Assembly (NCBI RefSeq): GCF_964204645.1
Contig: NC_134035.1
Location: 10,076,451 to 10,140,450 of the forward strand
Length of the DNA: 64,000 nt
Source of the DNA: Tubulanus polymorphus
Taxonomy: Eukaryota; Animalia; Nemertea
Reading direction: 5' to 3'
The position numbers were made by a program, and so were the translations under genes. Position 1 is the first letter of the stretch. Each line of letters starts with the position of its first letter. Of the stretch, positions 9,474 to 64,000 are shown in pieces. Under the pieces are notes generated by a model. The model ran no database searches and had not been told where the DNA came from. It was given only the letters and a program-made list of their open reading frames with translations.

Positions 9474-10604
9474 TTATTTGACTGAATTTCTGCAACGGAT
9501 TTTTGTACAGAAATATTCACGAATTTCTCGTCCGAGTAAAAGATATATGTAGAAATTGACCACATAGTTACACTGTTGGAACTGAGTGAAAATATCAAAT
9601 AGAAAATCTTTCTGTTCCGTAGAGATTGGCAGGTATACAGTAATAGTGGTTGGAAGTGTAAATATTGCAAATGCGAGTGAAACTGTTACAAGCATTGTTG
9701 TTGTTCGTATAGATTTTGTAGTTTTCTTATCATTCGAGACCATCTTTGAGCCTCTGAATAACTGAAATATTATGACAGAATTCGATATAATAATCAATGT
9801 TAAAGGTAAAACGTAGAGGTTGAAAACAATTTTCATAAAAAACATTAAACGGTCTATTGCTTCATAATAACATCCAAAAAACTTGTCGGAAAAATACATC
9901 GATAGAGTAGGTAGAAAATACAGAATCAGTGCATTAACTGCGGTTGTTATCAATATGGTGAATCTAGCGAATCTAGGAGTACATATCAAACGAGATGTGA
10001 ACGGGAAGAGAACAATTGCCGCACGTTCTAGAGATATAGCTACTATAAACCAGGAACTATTACAGGCTGCAAGTACTACAACGAATTCATAGATCTGACA
10101 ACCGACAAGCGAATTCATTATAAATATTGGACCAGTTTCTACGTGCAACATAACAAACTGTAAAACAGGCATCAAACATAGATGGAAGCAGAACAAAAAA
10201 TCACTGAGTGATAAAACGATAAGATAATTAGCGTATGATAATTTCCTGAATCTGCGACTTATCGTTATTAGGAAAGTAGCTGAATTTCCAAAGGCTCCGA
10301 ACAGGAACAATATAGGTAGAATGGCCGATGATAGCGTACGGTAGCTACCAGACCGGTTTGCTATAGACATGATGACCATATAACTGTGATAACTTCGAGC
10401 AATTTGTATCTGAGTAAGATTCATGATTCCCGGGTTGAGGAACTGCTGTCTTAGAGAACGGTAGCTTCCAGACCGGTTTGGTATAGACGTGATGACCAGC
10501 ATATAACTGTGATAACTTCGAGCCATTTGCATCTGAGTATTCACGAGATGAAAGAACTCCGTGTTAGTATTGGGAAATGAATTTACTGAATTTCGGTATT
10601 TCAT
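9474..10604 (-). CDS. Intronless class A (rhodopsin-like) orphan GPCR, copy 1; peptide-receptor/chemoreceptor-like
   Basis: Seven hydrophobic segments with GN in TM1, LSxSD in TM2, C...ISLERA in TM3, FAIFTLP in TM6 and NYVVNFYIY in TM7. The N-terminus has a 41-aa tandem duplication. The true start could be the shared MNLT Met. Confidence 0.9.
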   Translation of the reverse strand: MKYRNSVNSFPNTNTEFFHLVNTQMQMARSYHSYMLVITSIPNRSGSYRSLRQQFLNPGIMNLTQIQIARSYHSYMVIMSIANRSGSYRTLSSAILPILFLFGAFGNSATFLITISRRFRKLSYANYLIVLSLSDFLFCFHLCLMPVLQFVMLHVETGPIFIMNSLVGCQIYEFVVVLAACNSSWFIVAISLERAAIVLFPFTSRLICTPRFARFTILITTAVNALILYFLPTLSMYFSDKFFGCYYEAIDRLMFFMKIVFNLYVLPLTLIIISNSVIIFQLFRGSKMVSNDKKTTKSIRTTTMLVTVSLAFAIFTLPTTITVYLPISTEQKDFLFDIFTQFQQCNYVVNFYIYLLLGREIREYFCTKIRCRNSVK

Positions 10605-12343: not shown

Positions 12344-13294
12344 TTATTTGACTGAATTTCTGCAACGGATTTTTGTACAGAAATATTCACGAATTTCTCG
12401 TCCCAGTAAAAGATATATGTAAAAATTGACCACATAATTACACTGTTGGAACTGAGTGAAAATAGCAAATAGAGAATCTTTCTGTTCCGTAGAGATTGGA
12501 GCGTACACAATAATAGTATTTGGAAGTGTAAATATTGCAAATGCGAGTGAAACTGTTACAAGCGTTATTGTTGTTCGTATAGATTTTGTAGTTTTCTTAT
12601 CAGACGAGACCATCTTTGAGCCTCTGAATAACTGAAATATTATAACTGAATTCGATGTAATAATCAATGTTAAAGGTAGAACGTAGAGGATGAACATAAT
12701 TTTCATAAAAAACGTTAAACGGTCTATTGCTTTATAATAACATCCAAAAACCTTGTCGGAAAAATACATCGACAAAGTAGGTAGAAAATAAAGAATCAGT
12801 GCATTAACTGCGGTTATTATCAACATAGTGAATCGAGCGAATCTAGGAGTACATATCAAACGAGATGTGAACGGGAAGAGAACAACTGCCGCTCGCTCTA
12901 GAGATATAGCTACTATTAACCAGGAACTATTACAGGCTGCAAGTACTACTACGAATTCATAGATTTGACAACCGATCAGCGAATTCATTATAAATATTGG
13001 ATCAGTGGCTATGTGCAACAGAACAAACTGTAAAACAGGCATCAAACATAGATTGATGCAGAACAATAAATCACTGACCGATAAAACGATAAGATAGTTA
13101 GCGTATGATAAACTCCTGAATCTGCGACTTATCGTTATCAGGAAAGTAGCTGAATTTCCAAAGGCTCCAAGAAGGAACAAGATAGTTAGAATGGCCGTTA
13201 ATAGCGTACGGTAGCTACCAGACCGGTTTGCTATAGACATCATGACCATGTAACTGTGAAAACTTCGGGCAATTTGCATCTGAGTAAGATTCAT
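12344..13294 (-). CDS. Intronless class A orphan GPCR, copy 2 (316 aa)
   Basis: Close paralog of copy 1 with an intact 7TM. The upstream N-terminal extension is disrupted by an in-frame TGA, a 33-bp duplication and a 2-bp insertion, so the ORF begins at MNLTQ. Confidence 0.88.
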   Translation of the reverse strand: MNLTQMQIARSFHSYMVMMSIANRSGSYRTLLTAILTILFLLGAFGNSATFLITISRRFRSLSYANYLIVLSVSDLLFCINLCLMPVLQFVLLHIATDPIFIMNSLIGCQIYEFVVVLAACNSSWLIVAISLERAAVVLFPFTSRLICTPRFARFTMLIITAVNALILYFLPTLSMYFSDKVFGCYYKAIDRLTFFMKIMFILYVLPLTLIITSNSVIIFQLFRGSKMVSSDKKTTKSIRTTITLVTVSLAFAIFTLPNTIIVYAPISTEQKDSLFAIFTQFQQCNYVVNFYIYLLLGREIREYFCTKIRCRNSVK

Positions 13295-49987: not shown

Positions 49988-51046
49988 TTATTTGACTGAA
50001 TTTCTGCAACGGATTTTCACACAGAAATATTCACGAATTTCTCGTCCAAGTAAAAGATATACGTAGAAATTCACCACATAGTTACACTGTTGGAATTGAG
50101 TGAAAATATCAAATAGAAAATTTTTCCGTTCCGTAGAGAGTGGCAGGTATGCAGTGACAGCGGTTGGAAGTGTAAATATTGCAAATGCGAGTGAAACTGT
50201 AACAAGCATCATTGTTGTACGTATTGACTTTGTAGTTTTCTGATCAGACGAAACCATTTTTGAACCTCCGAATAAATGAAATATTATAACTGAATTTGAT
50301 GTGATGATTAGCGTTAAAGGTAGAAGGTACAGGATCATGGCAATTTTCATGAAAAACATTATTTGGTCAATCAATTTATAATAACATCCAAAAGTCTTGT
50401 CGGAAAAATGCATCGACAAAGTAGGTAGAAAATAAAGAATCACAACATTCACTCCGGTTATTATCAATACAGCGAATCTAGCGAATCTCGGTGTACATAT
50501 CAAACGAGCTGTGAACGGGAAGAGAACAATTGCCGCACGTTCTAGAGATATAGCTACTATTAACCAGGAACTATTGCAGCCTGCGAGTAGTACTACGAAT
50601 TCATAGATTTGACAACCGATCAGTGAATTCATCACATACATTGGACCTGTTTCTACGTGCAAGAGAACAAACTGTAAAACAGGCAACAAAGACAGATTGA
50701 CGCAGAACACAAAATCACTGACGGATAAAACGATGAGATAGTTAGCGTAGGATAATCTCCGAAATCTACGACTTATCATAATCAGGAAAGTAGCTGAATT
50801 CCCGAAAGCTCCAAACACGAACAATATAGGCAGAATGACTGATGAAAGCGTACGGTAGCTACCAGATCTGTTTGCTATAGACATGATGACCATATTACTA
50901 TGATAGCTTCGAGCAATTTGCAACTCAGTGAGATTCATGATTGACGTGATCGAAGAACTGTTTAACGTACTCGGTCGCTTATTGGAAAATGAATTCAGAT
51001 TGAAATAGATCCACAATAACGTCTTATTTGTGAAGCTGATATTCAT
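49988..51046 (-). CDS. Intronless class A orphan GPCR, copy 3 (352 aa)
   Basis: Same 7TM motifs as copies 1 and 2 but more diverged. The N-terminus is unduplicated and has five N-x-S/T sequons (NIS, NKT, NSS, NLT, NRS). Confidence 0.9.
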   Translation of the reverse strand: MNISFTNKTLLWIYFNLNSFSNKRPSTLNSSSITSIMNLTELQIARSYHSNMVIMSIANRSGSYRTLSSVILPILFVFGAFGNSATFLIMISRRFRRLSYANYLIVLSVSDFVFCVNLSLLPVLQFVLLHVETGPMYVMNSLIGCQIYEFVVLLAGCNSSWLIVAISLERAAIVLFPFTARLICTPRFARFAVLIITGVNVVILYFLPTLSMHFSDKTFGCYYKLIDQIMFFMKIAMILYLLPLTLIITSNSVIIFHLFGGSKMVSSDQKTTKSIRTTMMLVTVSLAFAIFTLPTAVTAYLPLSTERKNFLFDIFTQFQQCNYVVNFYVYLLLGREIREYFCVKIRCRNSVK

Positions 51047-57600: not shown

Positions 57601-59813
57601 CTGTGTGCATGAAGTACATTATCTATCTATGTAGAAACAATCGTTTTTAGGATGTAAAGTGCCTGTTTTAAATAGTAAAACATACGACAACGTTGGCACC
57701 CATTAGTTATCGAGTTCACGCGCATAAATGTCCGGTAAAAATATAGATTATCATTTTTAGCTATTGATTAGTAATACAAGTACAACAACAGGCGCGTGTA
57801 TTAAATCGTTTTACACAAATCTTATTCAGAGTTTTCCTTTTTCCTTTGAGGACAGCGGTGAAAAATATATCTATCTATATACGGTTTTATATACATAGGC
57901 AATCGTAGAGAAGACAACTTTTTGAAGAGATTTCGAGATTCAATCGTAAAGTGGCAGTTAGAGTGAGTATTCACTAAGGCTTCATTATTAGAATACGAGT
58001 GTTGGATATTGGCGAATTAGTCTTTGAACACGGAAAACCGTCGTCGCAATACCTTTCTCATCACAAATAGGCGATTTTGTTTGATTTCACAACCGATTTT
58101 CGGACGCTAGGCCCTCGATTAGTACAAAAATGCAGGCAAAACGTATACATGTACCTTTATCGTATTACGTGCTATGTACAATAACAAAATAGAAAAAAAA
58201 AGAAACACCAACAAAAAAGTTTTCAAACAAACAAACAACAAAAAATGCTAGTAGAAAATTGTCGTTTTGAGTAAAATGCCATATTATACATAGTTTAAGT
58301 ACACAGGTTGCTTTGTTCTAAATGCAATCATTACCAGTATCATCGAGAAATGAATCGAAGTTAAAATAACGAAATCTAAACAAAATTGAAACTTTATCCA
58401 CACAATGCACTAGTGGATAAAGGTCATTGTCAAAGTTTTTTGCTTAACCAAGTCGACTTGACATCATCAGACGCCTCAATCAAATGTATCCGTCAAAACC
58501 AGTACAGTTGTAGCCAAAATCAGTATTTTGATAGGACTGCACTAACGGTCTTATTGGATGACACCATTTTGGATTGACCGACCCACAAGGCTGGTTCATT
58601 CAGCCATGATGGAATTCCTATAACGGCAGACCAAGCCGGCTTGGTTAACCAAACGAACCCCGTATTGGTAAAACTGAGTTACCCGGATCGGGAAATTAAT
58701 CGAAAAGCCCCAGTAACCTTCTAGTTAAACTAAGTGAAATTTTCGAGCTTGTTACTTCAAAGTAAGGCATTTCGATTCCACAATCGAACGTGTCAACTAA
58801 ATGGTAATTCCCGTTTGAAACATCTTTTTTCCATTATTTCTCTGAGCAAGACATTGATAGAGCTGAACACACACACACACATACATACATACACATACAT
58901 CGCCCTATTTGTGTAAATATGAGTTTTCCCCGACAAAAATATGGCACGTAGAGTGGCAGGCATTATGATAACTGACGACAAACGCCGACAACCTTGTTTC
59001 CTATACAAGATTGGGTTTAGATATATATGTATGTATATGTACTGAGTTCACGCCATGAATTTACACCTATGATATAATACAGCAATACAGGCTGACCAAT
59101 GAACATTGAGCATACATTTAGTGATTATACTTATTATTATCATCATTATTATAATTATCATTATTACTATCGTTTTAATATCGTTAGTAGCATTTAGTTT
59201 ATATAAATATATATATATACATATAAATATATACATATACTTATATAAACAAACATATTCATATCAAGATACGTAGTTGTTACAGTCAGTGTACAACACC
59301 TTAGTGTCATGGAAATTTTATATAGTACAATGTAAGCATGTGTACACTCACTGTACATTGCACAACCTCTCTGTTACACTGTAAGGGTTCAAACATCTTG
59401 ATATAACATATATCCATAGGTATATACATATACTTTAATATCTATATACACAAGCATATGAGTACTGTTTAATCTACGCGGTTGAGTACTGTTTAATCTA
59501 CGCGGTTAAGTACAGTTGACCACAACATACAAGTTTTTTTACGGGCTAAACGAGAAAATATCACTCCGCATCCGATGTGGCTGATATTTCAACATTCAAA
59601 GTTCGATACTCCGATTCAATTTTCTGCTTCCTAGTAACGTTCAAGAATGTACCGACAGGAATACCCTACCACGGAAACAAAAAACGATCCACCAACTGTT
59701 CGCGATTAGCCACTAGATTCCTATCCTAGGATTGTCTCGAAGATAAGGATGCTATAAGCAGCGACCTACGGGCTCCACGGTCTCGGGGCGCGGATGGGTG
59801 AAAGCACTCTCTA
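53340..59813 (-). other. Candidate long 3' UTR of the zinc-finger gene
   Basis: No credible ORF, U-rich minus strand and few recognisable TEs. Minus-strand AATAAA at 53362-53357 is followed by a GT-rich stretch. The actual 3' end is uncertain. Confidence 0.4.
54562..54642. repeat. (TA)n microsatellite
   Basis: ~35 uninterrupted TA units. Confidence 0.98.
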
Positions 59814-61108
59814 TTATTGTTCACCGATATCGGTCACCGTGCTACGTATAACATCCATCAACATCAAATCGACATCTTCGCTTTCTCGATTCATCTCTTT
59901 GTCCATCGGCAAATCGGGCAACATCATGTGCAACATACGAACGACGTTCTTGCGTAAATCTTTCAGTTTCTGCTCGTACGGACAGTCGTCGGCCGGGCCG
60001 GCGCTCGAGCCGCTTTTCTTGCTGTCCTGCGACGAGTCACTCGACGTACTCGTGTTGTGTGAATGATTGTGATGAAGCGAGCCGGTGCTCGCACTGTTCG
60101 GCGATACGGTGACCGTCGCCGGCGACGATTCGCGCTGTAGGGGGCGTTGTTGTTGCTGCTGCTGCTCGTTGTGTAAATGAGAAGGCGAAGGCGTTGGTTT
60201 CGGCGAACCGGTCATGTTTATTTTCGGAGTCGGCGACGGCGTGTTATGACGACTGCTGATCGGCGACGCGTGCGACACGGAGAGATTCTCCGGTTCAGAC
60301 GGCGACGATAACTGCTGTTGATGATTGTTGTTCATGACTTTTCGAAAATCAGACGGTGGAATATCTAACCCGAGTTTCGCTTGACCCTGTAATATCGCGT
60401 TCATGTTCGGTATAAGATTATTGTCCGGTTGAACGTTCAGATTGTTTAAGATGTTCTTGTTGTCGGCGCCGGCGTTGCCGTTTATAATCGGCTGTTTCGT
60501 CAACGGCGGCTTATTTTCATTGTTCCGAACGTGTTCAAGGTCGAACTTGGTCGTTTTCGTGAAAAACGCGGAGTTTTTCAGATTGAGTCCGTTCAACAGG
60601 CCCTGAGGAGGAATGAACATATTGCCGTTCATGCCGTTCAGATTCATGCCGCCCATCATCAGATTCGGCGCGGCGAGCGGATTCTGCGTCAGCAGATTCA
60701 AACCGAGCGGATTCATCATCGGATTCAGCATGTTCATACCGTTCGGCAACATGCCGAAGTTACCGAGCTGATTTTGCGCGCCCATGAACGCCGGGTTCAT
60801 ATTCGGATTGGGCATGTGCCCGTCGACCGAGTCCGTGTTGTTGTTGTGAATGAGACCCTTGTTAGCGAGGTCGCCGGCGGTCATCATCGCGTTCAACGCG
60901 TTGATGTCCGGTTTGATGTCGCGTTCGTCGCTGGCGTGCGACCCGGAGTCGCGTCGTTGCCAAAAACGAAGCAAGTTCGCCTTGCCGAGTTTGCGATCGA
61001 GGATGAAGTACTTCTTGTTGCCGCCGTGTTTCGAGATGATGTGTATTTTCAGCGAGCTTCCTTGACTAAACGAAGCCCCGCAAGCGCCGCACCAGTACGG
61101 TTTGTCAC
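59814..61108 (-). CDS. C2H2 zinc-finger protein, last coding exon (3rd finger, N/M/S-rich region, C-terminal helical domain)
   Basis: Acceptor tttgcag|GT at 61109/61108. Splicing to the upstream exon rebuilds the HTGDKPY linker. Finger is CGAC...HIISKH; stop is TAA at 59816-59814. Confidence 0.92.
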
Positions 61109-62062
61109 CTGCAAATGTAATAAAACGTACATACATATGTAATCAATATATAACAACATGAAACGAGGATAACGTCGTTCGTCTGCGGTCGGAGGAGACA
61201 TTAATGTGATTTCGCTCGACGATATACAATTATTCACGGTCTCAATTCTCGCCGCAAAAGAATAAACACGTAGCCCTAAAATTACATTATCCATAATATA
61301 TCATGTCCGGCTAAAAACGGCGGCTGTAAAACCATAGCGGAACCGCGCGTCGTCGGTATTATTACTGTTGTAGATAAATTAATCGGAATTAGGTAGAATC
61401 TACTTCGATGCGAAAGAATATATCGTTAATATAGTAATACATTCTTTTCAGTAATGACGCAATGGTGCAGGTTTATAAGCCGATAATTCGATAATGGACT
61501 TTGTCAAAGTTCATGATTGGATCTACTTATTAAGTACGTCTCAAATGACTACATATTCACTGCCGATTTCGTTCGACTGCTTTGTTCTCACAGCAATTAC
61601 TTGTAAAATGAATTGACTCAGTCGGGACATGCGTGTGTGTGTCATATTCTGTAGTAGGCCGATGGCTGCTGCCAGCTACTAGTAGAATCATGAACTATGC
61701 AAGAATTTAGTGAGTGGCACATTATTTGAAAACTCTTACGAGTTTGGACCAATATTTGTTATAATATATCTAGACTGTAAGCTAGTTAAGGAGTGGTTTC
61801 CATTGACAAGTGACTGTCTGATTCAATTGAAGAAAAAAGTCACAAGAAGGAAGTAAAACTACCCGGTAATAGTTCGATGTTTCCACTATGTTGCAATGAG
61901 CTATATTCAAAACGATTAGAAAATGGCTCATAGCATTTGTATAGAAGTTTCAATCCTCAATTAGTTTTACTTCAAAACCATGAGTTTTTTCTTCGAAGTC
62001 AAGGATCATTTAAAAACAACTTTCAACAGAAACCCTGAAGCTTCTCATCATAAAATACGTAC

Positions 62063-63155
62063 CAGTATGCGTGCGAATATGAACGTACATATTGCTGTAG
62101 AATTTGGTCGTGTATGGACATAGTAGACAAGTGAAGATTTTACTGTTCTTCGGATTGTGGGCCTTCTCCATGTGTCGGTCGAGGTTGATCTGCGATTTGA
62201 ACGGGCGTCGACAATGACGGCACATGTAATCGTGGATCGGTTCGTTGGTATGAATGTCCGTCGTCGTCATCGCGCCGTTCGGGTACGCACCGCCGTACGC
62301 CGCCGCGCGCATGTCCAACGAGTCCTGAGCGTCTAATTTCTCCTGTTTGATTTGAGCCGTACTCGTGCTGAAATCAATCGGGATATCCCCGCCGACCATA
62401 CCCCCGGCCACGCCGCCGCTGCTGCTGCTGTTCATATTATTATTTTGTTGCTGTTGTAGTTTTTGATGATTTTGCGGCGAGTGCTGCGTAGGTGGCGCTA
62501 CCGCGTGCATCGACGGGTACCCGTTCATCGGTACGGCCGTCGGCGAGCTGAGATTCAACCCGTTGTGATTCGGCGTCATAATTCCCGGTTCGGTTTTGAT
62601 GTTCAACGGCATATTGTGCTGCTGTTTCATCTGCTGGTGCTGGTGTTCGATTTGTTGTTGAATTTGTTGTTGGAATTGTCGCTGGTTCTCCTGAGTTTGC
62701 TGCTGCAACTGTTGCAAGTGATACTGTAACTGCTGCTGTTGTTGTTGAAAGTCCATCGCGGTCGGGAACGCGGGCGGCATTTTCAGACCGTTCAATCCCG
62801 GGAAATCATTCGCCGTGTCGGCGTATTTAATGCGTTGATCGGCCTCTTGGTGGCGTTGCGGCGTTAAGTCCATGCCGTTATCTTGGAAACTAGCCTCGTC
62901 CTTGACGACGTTCATCGGTATCGGACTGTCGGGATCCGACTCGCCTTCCGAGTTCATCTCGTCGTTCGACAGCTCGGCCGCCGCCTCGTCGGGCATTCGC
63001 ATTATTCCGTTCGGATAAAAGTCTTTGCGCTTATTCCGCGGCCGATGCGAGAACATGTCGGTCATCGCGCACGATTTGATCGAATCGGTGTCCTGGGTAC
63101 CGCCCAGGAACGAGTTAGGCATCGTTTGTCCTATACTGCACATAGCCGAGTCCAT
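62063..63155 (-). CDS. C2H2 zinc-finger protein, first coding exon (Q-rich region, fingers 1-2)
   Basis: ATG at 63155 (MDSAM) within an exon whose acceptor is tttcag at 63245. Fingers CRHC...HMEKAH and CLLC...HIRTH; donor ACTG|gtacgt at 62063/62062. The two exons total 1093+1295=2388 nt, or 795 aa plus stop. Confidence 0.92.
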
Positions 63156-64000
63156 AGTACGTAAATCGACGCGTTTAAAAAAAAAATACACTTGAACGCA
63201 ACACGTATTTTCACGTAATCAACGATTCCTGCTTCTCATAGAACCTGAAACGACACGAATAGTGAAAATGATTACAATACTGAATATTGTCATCGACGTT
63301 AAACATGATTATATATAACAAACATATGCACAACGCGTGCACACGTACGGTTCATACACTCTAATATCGCGTATCGAGCAATGAAAATATCTGCAAACGG
63401 TAAAAATATACACAAATACTATTAAAATCAAACAATGGATCCGAAAAGCGGCAGATGTATGTTTTTACATATATATCTATATACGCTGCGATTTTTTTCA
63501 TAATTACACCGATCTTTTTTATACCCCGCCAATACCAGATGGCTCAAAAAAGTATTCGAACAATTACGTCAGCGAGGCTCGAAACTAAAAACCTGTCAAT
63601 GTCGTCAATAATCATACACTCGTTCATATTGATTACTTTTATGATAAATTAGATATTAGGATATTAGTGATGGACCAAAAAATGTGTCTGTGTAAAAATG
63701 TCTGTGTACAAAATCCAACTATAACAATGAAAAATGACGGTAACATAGTCTGATAATGTTTCCCCGAGGTAGGAGTTTATTTGATGTTTTAACTATATTC
63801 TAATAGTCATCTTGAGGAATACTGAGTTGCAACAGATATTATGAAATGCATATATTCAATCCAGATACTACCAGCCCAAGGAAACATTTTTGGACTTAAT
63901 ATCATTTTTTTCGTTATGATCCTCAACATATTATCGCCACAACACAGATATACAGTGTTTTATCAATATTATATAATATCAATTATATATATTATATATA

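What the first reader, a model, noticed from the sequence alone, without database searches (positions are those of the whole stretch)
59814..59984. C2H2 zinc-finger protein ends in a MORC3/MORC4-like C-terminal helical domain: possible sequence-specific MORC adaptor
Seen: after ~350 aa of low-complexity sequence the protein ends in an ordered amphipathic segment, YEQKLKDLRKNVVRMLHMMLPDLPMDKEMNRESEDVDLMLMDVI. Recalled, not searched: the extreme C-termini of vertebrate MORC3 and MORC4 follow the pattern KLxxLRxNVxxLLxxxxPDL...(SE)xVDxILxxV, the terminal coiled-coil region implicated in MORC dimerisation. This gene has no GHKL ATPase, S5 or CW domain, only three C2H2 fingers. Inference: a DNA-binding protein carrying the MORC dimerisation module could heterodimerise with MORC ATPases and target them to specific sequences, by analogy with KRAB-ZFP/TRIM28 logic. 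It could also simply use the module to homodimerise.
Basis: partly seen in the sequence, partly recalled or inferred. Interest (0 to 1): 0.8.

Follow-up and report, generated by a model that had tools for sequence, protein, structure and literature searches.

The report
Zinc-finger protein carrying a MORC tail
A ribbon-worm DNA-binding zinc-finger protein ends in the same small helical module that closes MORC3/MORC4 chromatin ATPases; the module also occurs outside MORCs, which gives a testable idea for how MORC-type silencers could be paired with or aimed at DNA.

Summary
The window (Tubulanus polymorphus, a nemertean) carries a transcribed two-exon gene on the minus strand. It encodes a 795-aa protein: a Q-rich N-terminus, three C2H2 fingers, a 347-aa low-complexity linker and an ordered 56-aa tail.

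The tail is a true homologue of the extreme C-terminus of MORC3/MORC4-type ATPases.
- The only other match in the whole 268-Mb genome is the last exon of its single MORC3-like gene.
- A profile built only from zinc-finger tails finds 102 of 132 MORC3/4-like proteins, 95 of them at the C-terminus. Reversed decoys reach 2.9 bits at most.
- hhalign of zinc-finger tails against MORC tails gives 98.6% probability, E 1.3e-15.

Pfam has no model for the module. AlphaFold2 predicts a helix-loop-helix hairpin (pLDDT 86).

The fingers-plus-tail architecture is conserved in molluscs, annelids, a brachiopod, an orthonectid and nemerteans, and none of these proteins is characterised. A third protein class carries two tandem copies, predicted to pack as one bundle.

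The function is inferred, not shown. Most likely the tail is a pairing module, giving homodimers and possibly hetero-pairing with MORC.

The parts
62063..63155 (-). Exon A coding part: first ATG (MDSAM...), a 309-aa Q/P/D/N-rich N-terminal region, then fingers 1 and 2. It ends in phase 1 inside the Gly codon of the TGDKPY linker.
   Evidence: ORF; donor ...ACTG|GTACGT read; junction seen in a run X4 contig; coordinates.
62157..62228 (-). C2H2 finger 1 (residues 310-333 of the model).
   Evidence: Pfam zf-C2H2 E 4.1e-5 for exon A; C-x2-C-x12-H-x4-H pattern.
62067..62135 (-). C2H2 finger 2 (residues 341-363).
   Evidence: Pfam zf-H2C2_5 E 2e-4; pattern; 42-46% identical to the finger region of mollusc relatives.
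61109..62062 (-). Intron of 954 nt (GT..AG) inside the linker between fingers 2 and 3. Many database relatives start exactly at finger 3, so this intron position appears to be conserved.
   Evidence: (joint 61106->62061, cut +2).
61026..61097 (-). C2H2 finger 3 (residues 369-392), followed by a conserved ~50-residue stretch.
   Evidence: Pfam zf-C2H2/zf-C2H2_4 E ~0.05; pattern; 74% identical over 82 aa to P0002 and 36-60% to other relatives.
59985..61025 (-). Linker of 347 aa rich in N, L, S, P and G, most of it low-complexity and likely disordered. Its first ~50 residues after finger 3 are conserved.
   Evidence: Composition; no Pfam family.
59817..59984 (-). MORC-tail module, the last 56 residues of the protein (740-795): KL..LR.NV..ML....PDL, a loop, then VD..L..VI.
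   Evidence: homology; fold.
59922..59981 (-). Predicted helix 1 of the module (tail residues 2-21). It contains the invariant L-R, and the invariant P follows it directly.
   Evidence: AlphaFold2, pLDDT 92-94 over this part; invariant columns L10, R11, P23 in A4.
59823..59876 (-). Predicted helix 2 of the module (tail residues 37-54), with the conserved V-D..L..V-I.
   Evidence: column frequencies.
59814..59816 (-). Stop codon (TAA). The transcript continues into a 3' UTR past 59600.
   Evidence: X4 contig covering 59600-59930.

Best explanation
The gene encodes a nuclear, sequence-specific DNA-binding protein with three C2H2 fingers. It belongs to an uncharacterised family found across Lophotrochozoa. 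Its last ~50 residues are a portable module of common descent with the extreme C-terminus of MORC3/MORC4-type GHKL ATPases.

Shown: the homology, the C-terminal position, the conservation of the architecture, transcription and splicing, and a confidently predicted helix-loop-helix hairpin.

Inferred: the hairpin is a pairing unit. Two hairpins pack into a four-helix bundle, so the module sets the protein's oligomeric state. By default it would make the finger protein a homodimer that reads a bipartite or palindromic site through 2 x 3 fingers on long flexible linkers. Because the animal's MORC3-like ATPase carries the same module, mixed pairing that brings MORC to the sites bound by the fingers is possible but not demonstrated.
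For: Homology
- The only non-self match of the tail in the 268-Mb genome is the last exon of the one gene with HATPase_c_3, Morc6_S5 and zf-CW. With the family profile both places score E 2e-18 and 2e-12 and nothing else in the genome matches.
- An HMM built from zinc-finger tails only hits 102 of 132 MORC3/4-like proteins, from cnidarians to mammals, 95 of them at the C-terminus. The top score is 55 bits; reversed decoys reach 2.9 bits at most.
- hhalign gives 98.6% probability, E 1.3e-15.

Fold
- AlphaFold2 predicts helix 2-21, a loop, and helix 37-54, with pLDDT 86.

Pairing
- Both helices carry wide conserved hydrophobic stripes, at tail positions 7, 10, 14, 17, 18, 21, 22, 25 and 38, 41, 42, 45, 46. 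That is more than one hairpin needs to bury.
- A third protein class carries two tandem copies. For one member (P0017) AlphaFold2 gives pTM 0.70 despite a disordered 17-residue connector, and structural matches span both copies, so the model is one bundle.
- The best solved-structure match of the profile is the MORC2 C-terminus, residues 984-1015, at the end of the dimeric CC3 (PMC13189624).

Selection
- Zinc-finger tails are strongly conserved across mollusc classes, annelids and a brachiopod.
Against: - No multimer prediction or experiment was possible, so pairing rests on indirect signs.
- The pTM argument comes from one model built on a six-sequence alignment.
- In MORC2 the dimer interface lies at 901-975, upstream of the weakly matching stretch. 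The stretch itself overlaps an IDR-binding domain (1004-1032) and a DNA-binding 'CC4' (963-1020), so the module could do something other than dimerise.
- The MORC2 match is weak (E 0.036).
- The papers held do not map MORC3 dimerisation to its last 50 residues.
- The Tubulanus tail departs from the family consensus. It is Met-rich, has C-P-Y where most relatives have C-x-H, and has T where most have N.
Confidence: 0.55

Rival explanations
1. MORC adaptor. The zinc-finger tail pairs specifically with the tail of the animal's MORC3-like ATPase, so the three fingers deliver the ATPase clamp to defined DNA sequences. The logic is that of KRAB-ZFP/TRIM28.
For: - Both proteins of the same genome carry the module at their extreme C-terminus, and no third carrier exists in that genome.
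- Helix 1 is 14/23 identical between the two.
- Among 184 distinct tails, H at position 19 (3%) together with P at position 26 (2%) occurs only in the Tubulanus finger protein, the Tubulanus MORC and one unplaced sequence, P0071 (noticed post hoc).
- The tandem-copy class pairs two diverged copies in one chain, so unlike copies can probably pack.
- MORCs of other eukaryotes are reported to work with sequence-specific factors, for example AP2 factors in Plasmodium (abstract of PMC11483127).
Against: - Same-species zinc-finger/MORC tail pairs are not more alike than cross-species pairs in 10 species.
- Spiralian MORC tails have a shortened loop and have diverged fast (10-25 bits against the zinc-finger profile), while zinc-finger tails stay near-constant. 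They resemble amphioxus and hemichordate MORC3 tails more (51-55 bits) than the MORC tails of their own phyla.
- No interaction data exist.
Confidence: 0.25
2. Shared-partner or condensate sticker. The module does not pair with itself. It binds a third component: a disordered region (as reported for the MORC2 IDR-binding domain), a nuclear-body scaffold or another conserved protein. Finger protein and MORC would then be sent to the same compartment without touching each other.
For: - The profile's best solved-structure match overlaps MORC2 1004-1032, which NMR shows binds the MORC2 IDR and drives condensation.
- The finger protein carries 347 + 309 residues of low-complexity sequence that could take part in such multivalent contacts.
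- High conservation of zinc-finger tails despite divergent MORC tails fits a conserved third partner.
Against: - The MORC2 match is weak (E 0.036) and covers mainly helix 1.
- The tandem-copy proteins and the wide hydrophobic stripes fit self-pairing better.
- No candidate partner is known.
Confidence: 0.2
3. Auxiliary nucleic-acid-binding helix. The tail adds DNA or RNA contacts, as reported for the MORC2 segment 963-1020 ('CC4').
For: - Helix 1 is basic (K/R at tail positions 6, 8, 11, 12, 16).
- Tan et al. 2025 found that isolated MORC2 963-1020 binds DNA (PMC12216690).
Against: - Helix 2 and the loop are strongly acidic and the module's net charge is about -3 (8 K/R against 11 D/E).
- The conserved positions are hydrophobic rather than basic.
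- The protein already has three fingers.
Confidence: 0.05
4. Chance or convergent amphipathic helix with no common descent, or a gene-model artefact that fuses two genes.
For: The segment is short, and no Pfam model exists that could anchor it.
Against: - Reversed-sequence controls reach 2.9 bits at most, against up to 55 bits for real sequences.
- hhalign gives E 1.3e-15.
- L-R and P are invariant, and the position is always C-terminal.
- Finger 3 and the tail lie in one open frame that is covered by transcript contigs.
- More than 10 named species share the same architecture.
Confidence: 0.01

Closest known systems
C-terminal tail of MORC3 and MORC4 (animal GHKL-CW ATPases)
   Same: The same ~50-residue motif ([KR]L..LR.NV..LL....P.L, loop, [VI]D..L..V), always at the extreme C-terminus. 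Profile-profile probability is 98.6%. It is present in this animal's own MORC3-like protein.
   Different: The host protein has no GHKL ATPase, S5 or CW domain. It has three C2H2 fingers and long low-complexity regions instead. Spiralian MORC tails have a shorter loop than the zinc-finger tails.
MORC2 C-terminal region (CC3 dimer 901-1003, IDR-binding domain 1004-1032; PDB 9KQL, 9CDF)
   Same: It is the top solved-structure match of the tail profile, at residues 984-1015: a KL.KLR.N[IV]..LL helix near the C-terminus of a MORC paralogue. The region is part of a constitutive dimerisation and condensation unit.
   Different: The match is weak (E 0.036) and the invariant proline is not conserved in MORC2. 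The mapped MORC2 dimer contacts (L911, L915, F922) lie upstream of the matching stretch.
KRAB zinc-finger proteins with TRIM28
   Same: The same logic: DNA-reading C2H2 fingers joined to a small module that could couple to a chromatin silencer.
   Different: This is analogy only. The KRAB domain is unrelated in sequence, sits at the N-terminus and binds TRIM28. Here there are only three fingers, the family is single-copy, and the partner is unknown.
Ikaros-family factors (N-terminal DNA-binding fingers plus a separate C-terminal dimerisation unit)
   Same: A few DNA-binding C2H2 fingers and a distinct C-terminal module proposed to set the oligomeric state. Some mollusc relatives are automatically named 'Ikaros-like'.
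   Different: From my own knowledge, Ikaros dimerises through two C-terminal zinc fingers, not through a helical hairpin. No orthology was found.

Membership tests
MORC (microrchidia) ATPase family | GHKL ATPase domain (Pfam HATPase_c_3) | tested here: not met
   There is no hit in either exon at E<=1. The true MORC gene of the genome, on contig C1, does hit.
MORC (microrchidia) ATPase family | S5-fold transducer domain (Morc6_S5) and CW zinc finger | tested here: not met
   Neither is found in the window gene or in full-length relatives. Both are present in the C1 MORC gene.
MORC (microrchidia) ATPase family | MORC3/4-type C-terminal tail motif | tested here: met
   It is the only MORC feature the protein has, so the protein is not a MORC.
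C2H2 zinc-finger DNA-binding proteins | Tandem C-x2-4-C-x12-H-x3-5-H units joined by TGEKP-like linkers | tested here: met
   Three units lie at residues 310-333, 341-363 and 369-392, with a THTGDKPY linker across the splice site. Single-finger Pfam scores are just below the gathering threshold (24.2 against 25.2 bits).
MORC-tail module (no Pfam model; defined here by alignment A4) | [KR]L..LR.N[VI]..[LM]L....P.L, an 8-15-residue loop, [VI]D..L..V, within ~25 residues of the C-terminus | tested here: met
   The invariant L10, R11 and P23 are present. The window tail scores 73.6 bits against the family profile. The module ends 6 residues before the stop.
MORC-tail module (no Pfam model; defined here by alignment A4) | Helix-loop-helix hairpin fold | tested here: met
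   AlphaFold2 with A4 gives pLDDT 86 and pTM 0.66, with helices at 2-21 and 37-54. This is a prediction only.
MORC-tail module (no Pfam model; defined here by alignment A4) | Self- or hetero-pairing (dimerisation) | not testable with these tools
   No multimer prediction is available. Indirect support comes from the tandem-copy protein model.
Lophotrochozoan three-finger-plus-tail family (uncharacterised) | Three homologous fingers, a conserved stretch after finger 3, a variable linker and a terminal MORC-tail | tested here: met
   BLASTP of both exons finds the fingers and the tail in the same order in Mytilus, Octopus, Bulinus, Babylonia, Elysia, Dreissena, Lingula, Capitella, Paralvinella and other relatives.

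The most novel reading that the evidence does not exclude
In Spiralia, a dedicated three-finger C2H2 protein uses a copy of the MORC3/4 C-terminal hairpin to hetero-pair with the MORC3-like ATPase and load it at specific DNA sequences. This would be the first sequence-specific adaptor of an animal MORC that works through a shared module. It would also imply that the unstudied last 50 residues of vertebrate MORC3 and MORC4 are a partner-exchange interface.
Probability: 0.2. Interest if true: 0.8.

Novelty: new variant of a known kind. Interest (0 to 1): 0.6.

Why it matters
How animal MORC ATPases are aimed at their targets is only partly understood. Reported routes are H3K4me3 reading by the CW domain and SUMO/DAXX for MORC3, and HUSH for MORC2.

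This work defines the last ~50 residues of MORC3/4 as a discrete, ancient module present from cnidarians to mammals. The module has no Pfam model and no assigned function. It has also been moved onto a DNA-binding zinc-finger family and onto a tandem-copy family.

That yields concrete experiments: whether the tail pairs with itself, whether it pairs across proteins, and whether the zinc-finger protein and MORC co-occupy chromatin. It also points to a neglected part of disease-linked vertebrate MORC3/4. If the module only homodimerises, the finding is a modest domain-shuffling case.

Tried and rejected
- The search for homologous proteins with exon B restricted to the tail gave nothing. The length filter of 242-770 aa excludes the ~800-aa relatives, so this is uninformative.
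- Pfam on the tail, on the MORC last exon and on ten unexplained carriers found no family.
- Foldseek of the tail model against PDB found nothing at E<=0.001. VIA-align wide and ESM-Atlas searches with the two-copy model found only generic helical bundles (best Z 5.9, best TM 0.48), so no fold assignment was made.
- A protein-atlas feature search of P0017 gave no usable hit. The contig context of P0066 gave no annotated neighbours.
- Co-evolution or gene conversion between same-species tails was tested by an identity matrix over 10 species. There was no excess, so this was rejected as support.
- Seven literature searches found no paper that describes the module outside MORCs or maps a function to the MORC3/4 tail. 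Mimura 2010 is not held in the library.
- The chance-resemblance and fused-gene-model readings were rejected (see the rival explanations).
- The spliced protein was never sent to a search or folding tool. Exons were searched apart by reference. They were joined only inside a local script to count residues and convert coordinates.

Full report
**What is in the sequence**

The finding lies at the 3' end of a gene on the minus strand. A 440-codon open frame (59814-61136) runs without interruption from the third C2H2 finger to the stop.

A second open frame upstream (62010-63191) holds a Q-rich region and two more fingers, and ends in HIRTHTG followed by GTACGT. Joining donor 62062/62061 to acceptor 61110/61109 restores the canonical THTGDKPY linker in frame.

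A contig of public run X4 carries exactly this junction (it skips 954 nt, GT..AG on the minus strand). Contigs of runs X2-X4 cover the exons, including the tail and a 3' UTR, but almost none of the intron. The gene is therefore transcribed and spliced as modelled.

The model is 795 aa:
- a 309-aa N-terminal region rich in Q, P, D and N;
- fingers at residues 310-333, 341-363 and 369-392;
- a 347-aa linker rich in N, L, S and P;
- the tail, at residues 740-795.

The joined protein was used only for this bookkeeping. All searches and folds used single exons or the tail by reference.

Pfam sees only C2H2 families and nothing on the tail.

**Whose genome**

The tail's only other match in the 268-Mb assembly lies on contig C1. 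[quoted passage not shown]

**Is the tail really MORC-like?**

Four lines of evidence agree.

1. Own genome. The tail searched in six frames against its own genome gives one non-self hit (E 0.015, 48% identity). That hit is the last exon of a gene whose upstream exons match HATPase_c_3, Morc6_S5 and zf-CW. With a family profile the two places score E 2e-18 and 2e-12, and nothing else in the genome matches.
2. Profile without any MORC sequence. An HMM built only from 36 non-redundant tails of proteins that also carry the homologous finger 3 was run against 132 MORC3/4-like proteins collected with the Tubulanus MORC. It hit 102 at i-E<0.01, 95 of them within 25 residues of the C-terminus. The best were amphioxus and hemichordate MORC3 (55-48 bits). 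The same proteins reversed reached at most 2.9 bits.
3. Window tail alone. As a single sequence it hits 42 of the 132, 39 of them at the C-terminus, with decoys at 2.8 bits or less.
4. Profile against profile. hhalign of zinc-finger-only tails (A6) against MORC-only tails (A7) gives 98.6% probability and E 1.3e-15 over 49 columns.

The module is [KR]L..LR.N[VI]..[LM]L....P.L, a loop of 8-15 residues, then [VI]D..L..V. L-R and P are invariant in the 31-sequence alignment A4.

No Pfam family covers it. This holds for the library used here and for the precomputed domain lists of the MORC3 and zinc-finger proteins.

**Who carries it**

A profile search of 1.84 billion representative proteins returned 71 clusters at E<=0.001, nearly all matching at their very end. 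There are three classes.

- **MORC3/MORC4**, from cnidarians (Acropora, Dendronephthya, Rhopilema) to mammals.
- **The three-finger family of the window gene.** BLASTP of both exons shows fingers, a conserved post-finger stretch and the tail in the same order in:
  - Mytilus, Dreissena, Octopus, Argonauta, Bulinus, Babylonia, Elysia and Candidula (molluscs);
  - Lingula (brachiopod);
  - Capitella, Paralvinella and Dimorphilus (annelids);
  - Intoshia (orthonectid).

  All carry automatic or "uncharacterized" names. Many 300-450-aa database entries start exactly at finger 3. They are last-exon-only gene calls, which also suggests that the intron position is conserved. Every named carrier is a lophotrochozoan. 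I found none in ecdysozoans, deuterostomes or cnidarians, but the search does not prove absence.
- **Two-copy proteins** without any Pfam domain, with two tandem copies of the module at the C-terminus (P0014, P0017, P0052, P0059, P0062, P0066).

**Structure**

AlphaFold2 with alignment A4 predicts a hairpin: helix 2-21, a 15-residue loop, helix 37-54 (mean pLDDT 86, pTM 0.66). Foldseek finds no significant solved relative.

By sequence, the best solved-structure match of the profile is the C-terminus of MORC2 (residues 984-1015 of 1032; E 0.036; entries 9CDF, 9CDG, 9KQL). That region ends the dimeric CC3 (901-1003). It overlaps the IDR-binding domain (1004-1032) of PMC13189624 and the DNA-binding "CC4" (963-1020) of PMC12216690. 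The match is weak and is treated as a lead only.

**How it most likely works**

Shown:
- homology to the MORC3/4 tail;
- terminal position;
- strong conservation of the zinc-finger tails;
- a confidently predicted hairpin;
- expression and splicing of the gene.

Inferred: the hairpin pairs with a second hairpin. The reasons are these.
- Both helices have conserved double hydrophobic positions (17/18, 21/22, 41/42, 45/46), which is more than one hairpin can bury.
- Nature has made single chains with two copies. For P0017 the model has pTM 0.70 despite a 17-residue low-confidence connector, and structural matches span both copies, so the model is one bundle.

I therefore read the protein as a dimeric three-finger DNA binder. 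Pairing with MORC is a possible extra.

**The adaptor idea**

It remains attractive. The zinc-finger protein and the MORC are the only two carriers in this genome. Their helix 1 is 14/23 identical. Among 184 distinct tails, H19 together with P26 occurs only in these two and in one unplaced sequence. I noticed that pair of residues before counting, so it is weak evidence.

Against it:
- In ten species, same-species zinc-finger and MORC tails are no more alike than cross-species pairs.
- Spiralian MORC tails have shortened their loop and drifted, while the zinc-finger tails stayed nearly constant. The zinc-finger tails resemble deuterostome MORC3 tails more than the MORC tails of their own phyla. 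A tail that must fit a fast-changing partner would be expected to change with it.

I put the adaptor reading at about 0.2-0.25 and a shared third partner or condensate sticker at about 0.2. A nucleic-acid-binding role is low, and chance is near zero.

**Novelty and verdict**

The proteins involved are of known kinds: C2H2 factors and MORC ATPases. What is new:
- the last ~50 residues of MORC3/4 are a discrete, ancient and portable module;
- a lophotrochozoan-wide zinc-finger family and a tandem-copy family carry it.

Seven full-text searches found no description of this. That is a limited test of novelty.

The functional part is open, and the experiments listed under next steps would settle it.

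Noticed in passing
not in the window; proteins P0014, P0017, P0052, P0059, P0062, P0066 (alignment A5): A third class of carriers has two tandem copies of the MORC-tail module at the C-terminus, separated by a conserved V-V-L-C-K-S/T-P stretch. They have no Pfam domain and come from organisms I could not identify (ENA assemblies). AlphaFold2 models the two copies of P0017 as one bundle (pTM 0.70).
   Followed up: partly
tails of zinc-finger family members (alignments A4, A6); window 59976-59984: Most zinc-finger-family tails are preceded by C-x3-5-C-x-H, and many have a further H in helix 2 (LLHEVI). This could be a zinc site stapling the N-terminal extension to the hairpin. Tubulanus has only C-P-Y there, and MORC tails lack the motif.
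   Followed up: no
window 59907-59930 and L007:9747-9770 (MORC last exon): The Tubulanus zinc-finger tail and MORC tail share two residues that are rare in the family: H at tail position 19 (3% of 184 tails) and P at position 26 (2%). Only one other sequence, P0071, has both. Overall identity of the two tails is not elevated, so this may be coincidence, co-evolution or a local conversion.
   Followed up: partly
MORC tails of molluscs, Lingula, Lineus and Tubulanus (alignments A4, A7): Spiralian MORC3-like tails have a loop 5-8 residues shorter and are much more diverged than the zinc-finger tails of the same phyla. The zinc-finger tails score best against amphioxus and hemichordate MORC3 tails.
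   Followed up: partly
PDB 9CDF/9CDG/9KQL, MORC2 residues 984-1015: The tail profile weakly matches the MORC2 C-terminus (E 0.036), which lacks the invariant proline. This hints that the module is older than the MORC2 / MORC3-4 split.
   Followed up: partly
window 9474-10604, 12344-13294, 49988-51046 (all minus strand): Three intronless open frames of 316-376 aa match rhodopsin-family 7TM receptors (Pfam 7tm_1, E 1e-14 to 3e-16). This is a small cluster of GPCR genes upstream of the zinc-finger gene.
   Followed up: partly
window 59459-59517: A 24-nt unit is repeated 2.5 times (94% match), about 300 nt downstream of the stop codon and probably inside the 3' UTR.
   Followed up: no
window 60262, 62004, 62936, 63083 (loose ends of X2/X3 contigs): Several transcript contigs end in the same foreign 10-12 letters, once followed by the start of an Illumina adapter. 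This is most likely a library adapter left in the contigs, not biology.
   Followed up: no
window 63272 (X2 contig loose end) and 61516-61746 (X4 contig inside the intron): One contig upstream of the start codon continues into unrelated sequence at 63272, which may mark a further 5' exon junction. A low-depth contig lies inside the intron and may be unspliced RNA. The 5' end of the gene was not resolved.
   Followed up: no
P0126 (Intoshia linei, named 'PRA1 family protein 1'); turtle 'RNA-binding protein 41' isoforms in the cluster of P0046: These public gene models appear to fuse neighbouring genes. The Intoshia entry combines C2H2 fingers and a MORC-tail with a PRA1 domain. Some turtle RBM41 isoforms run into MORC4 and so end in the MORC4 tail.
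   Followed up: no
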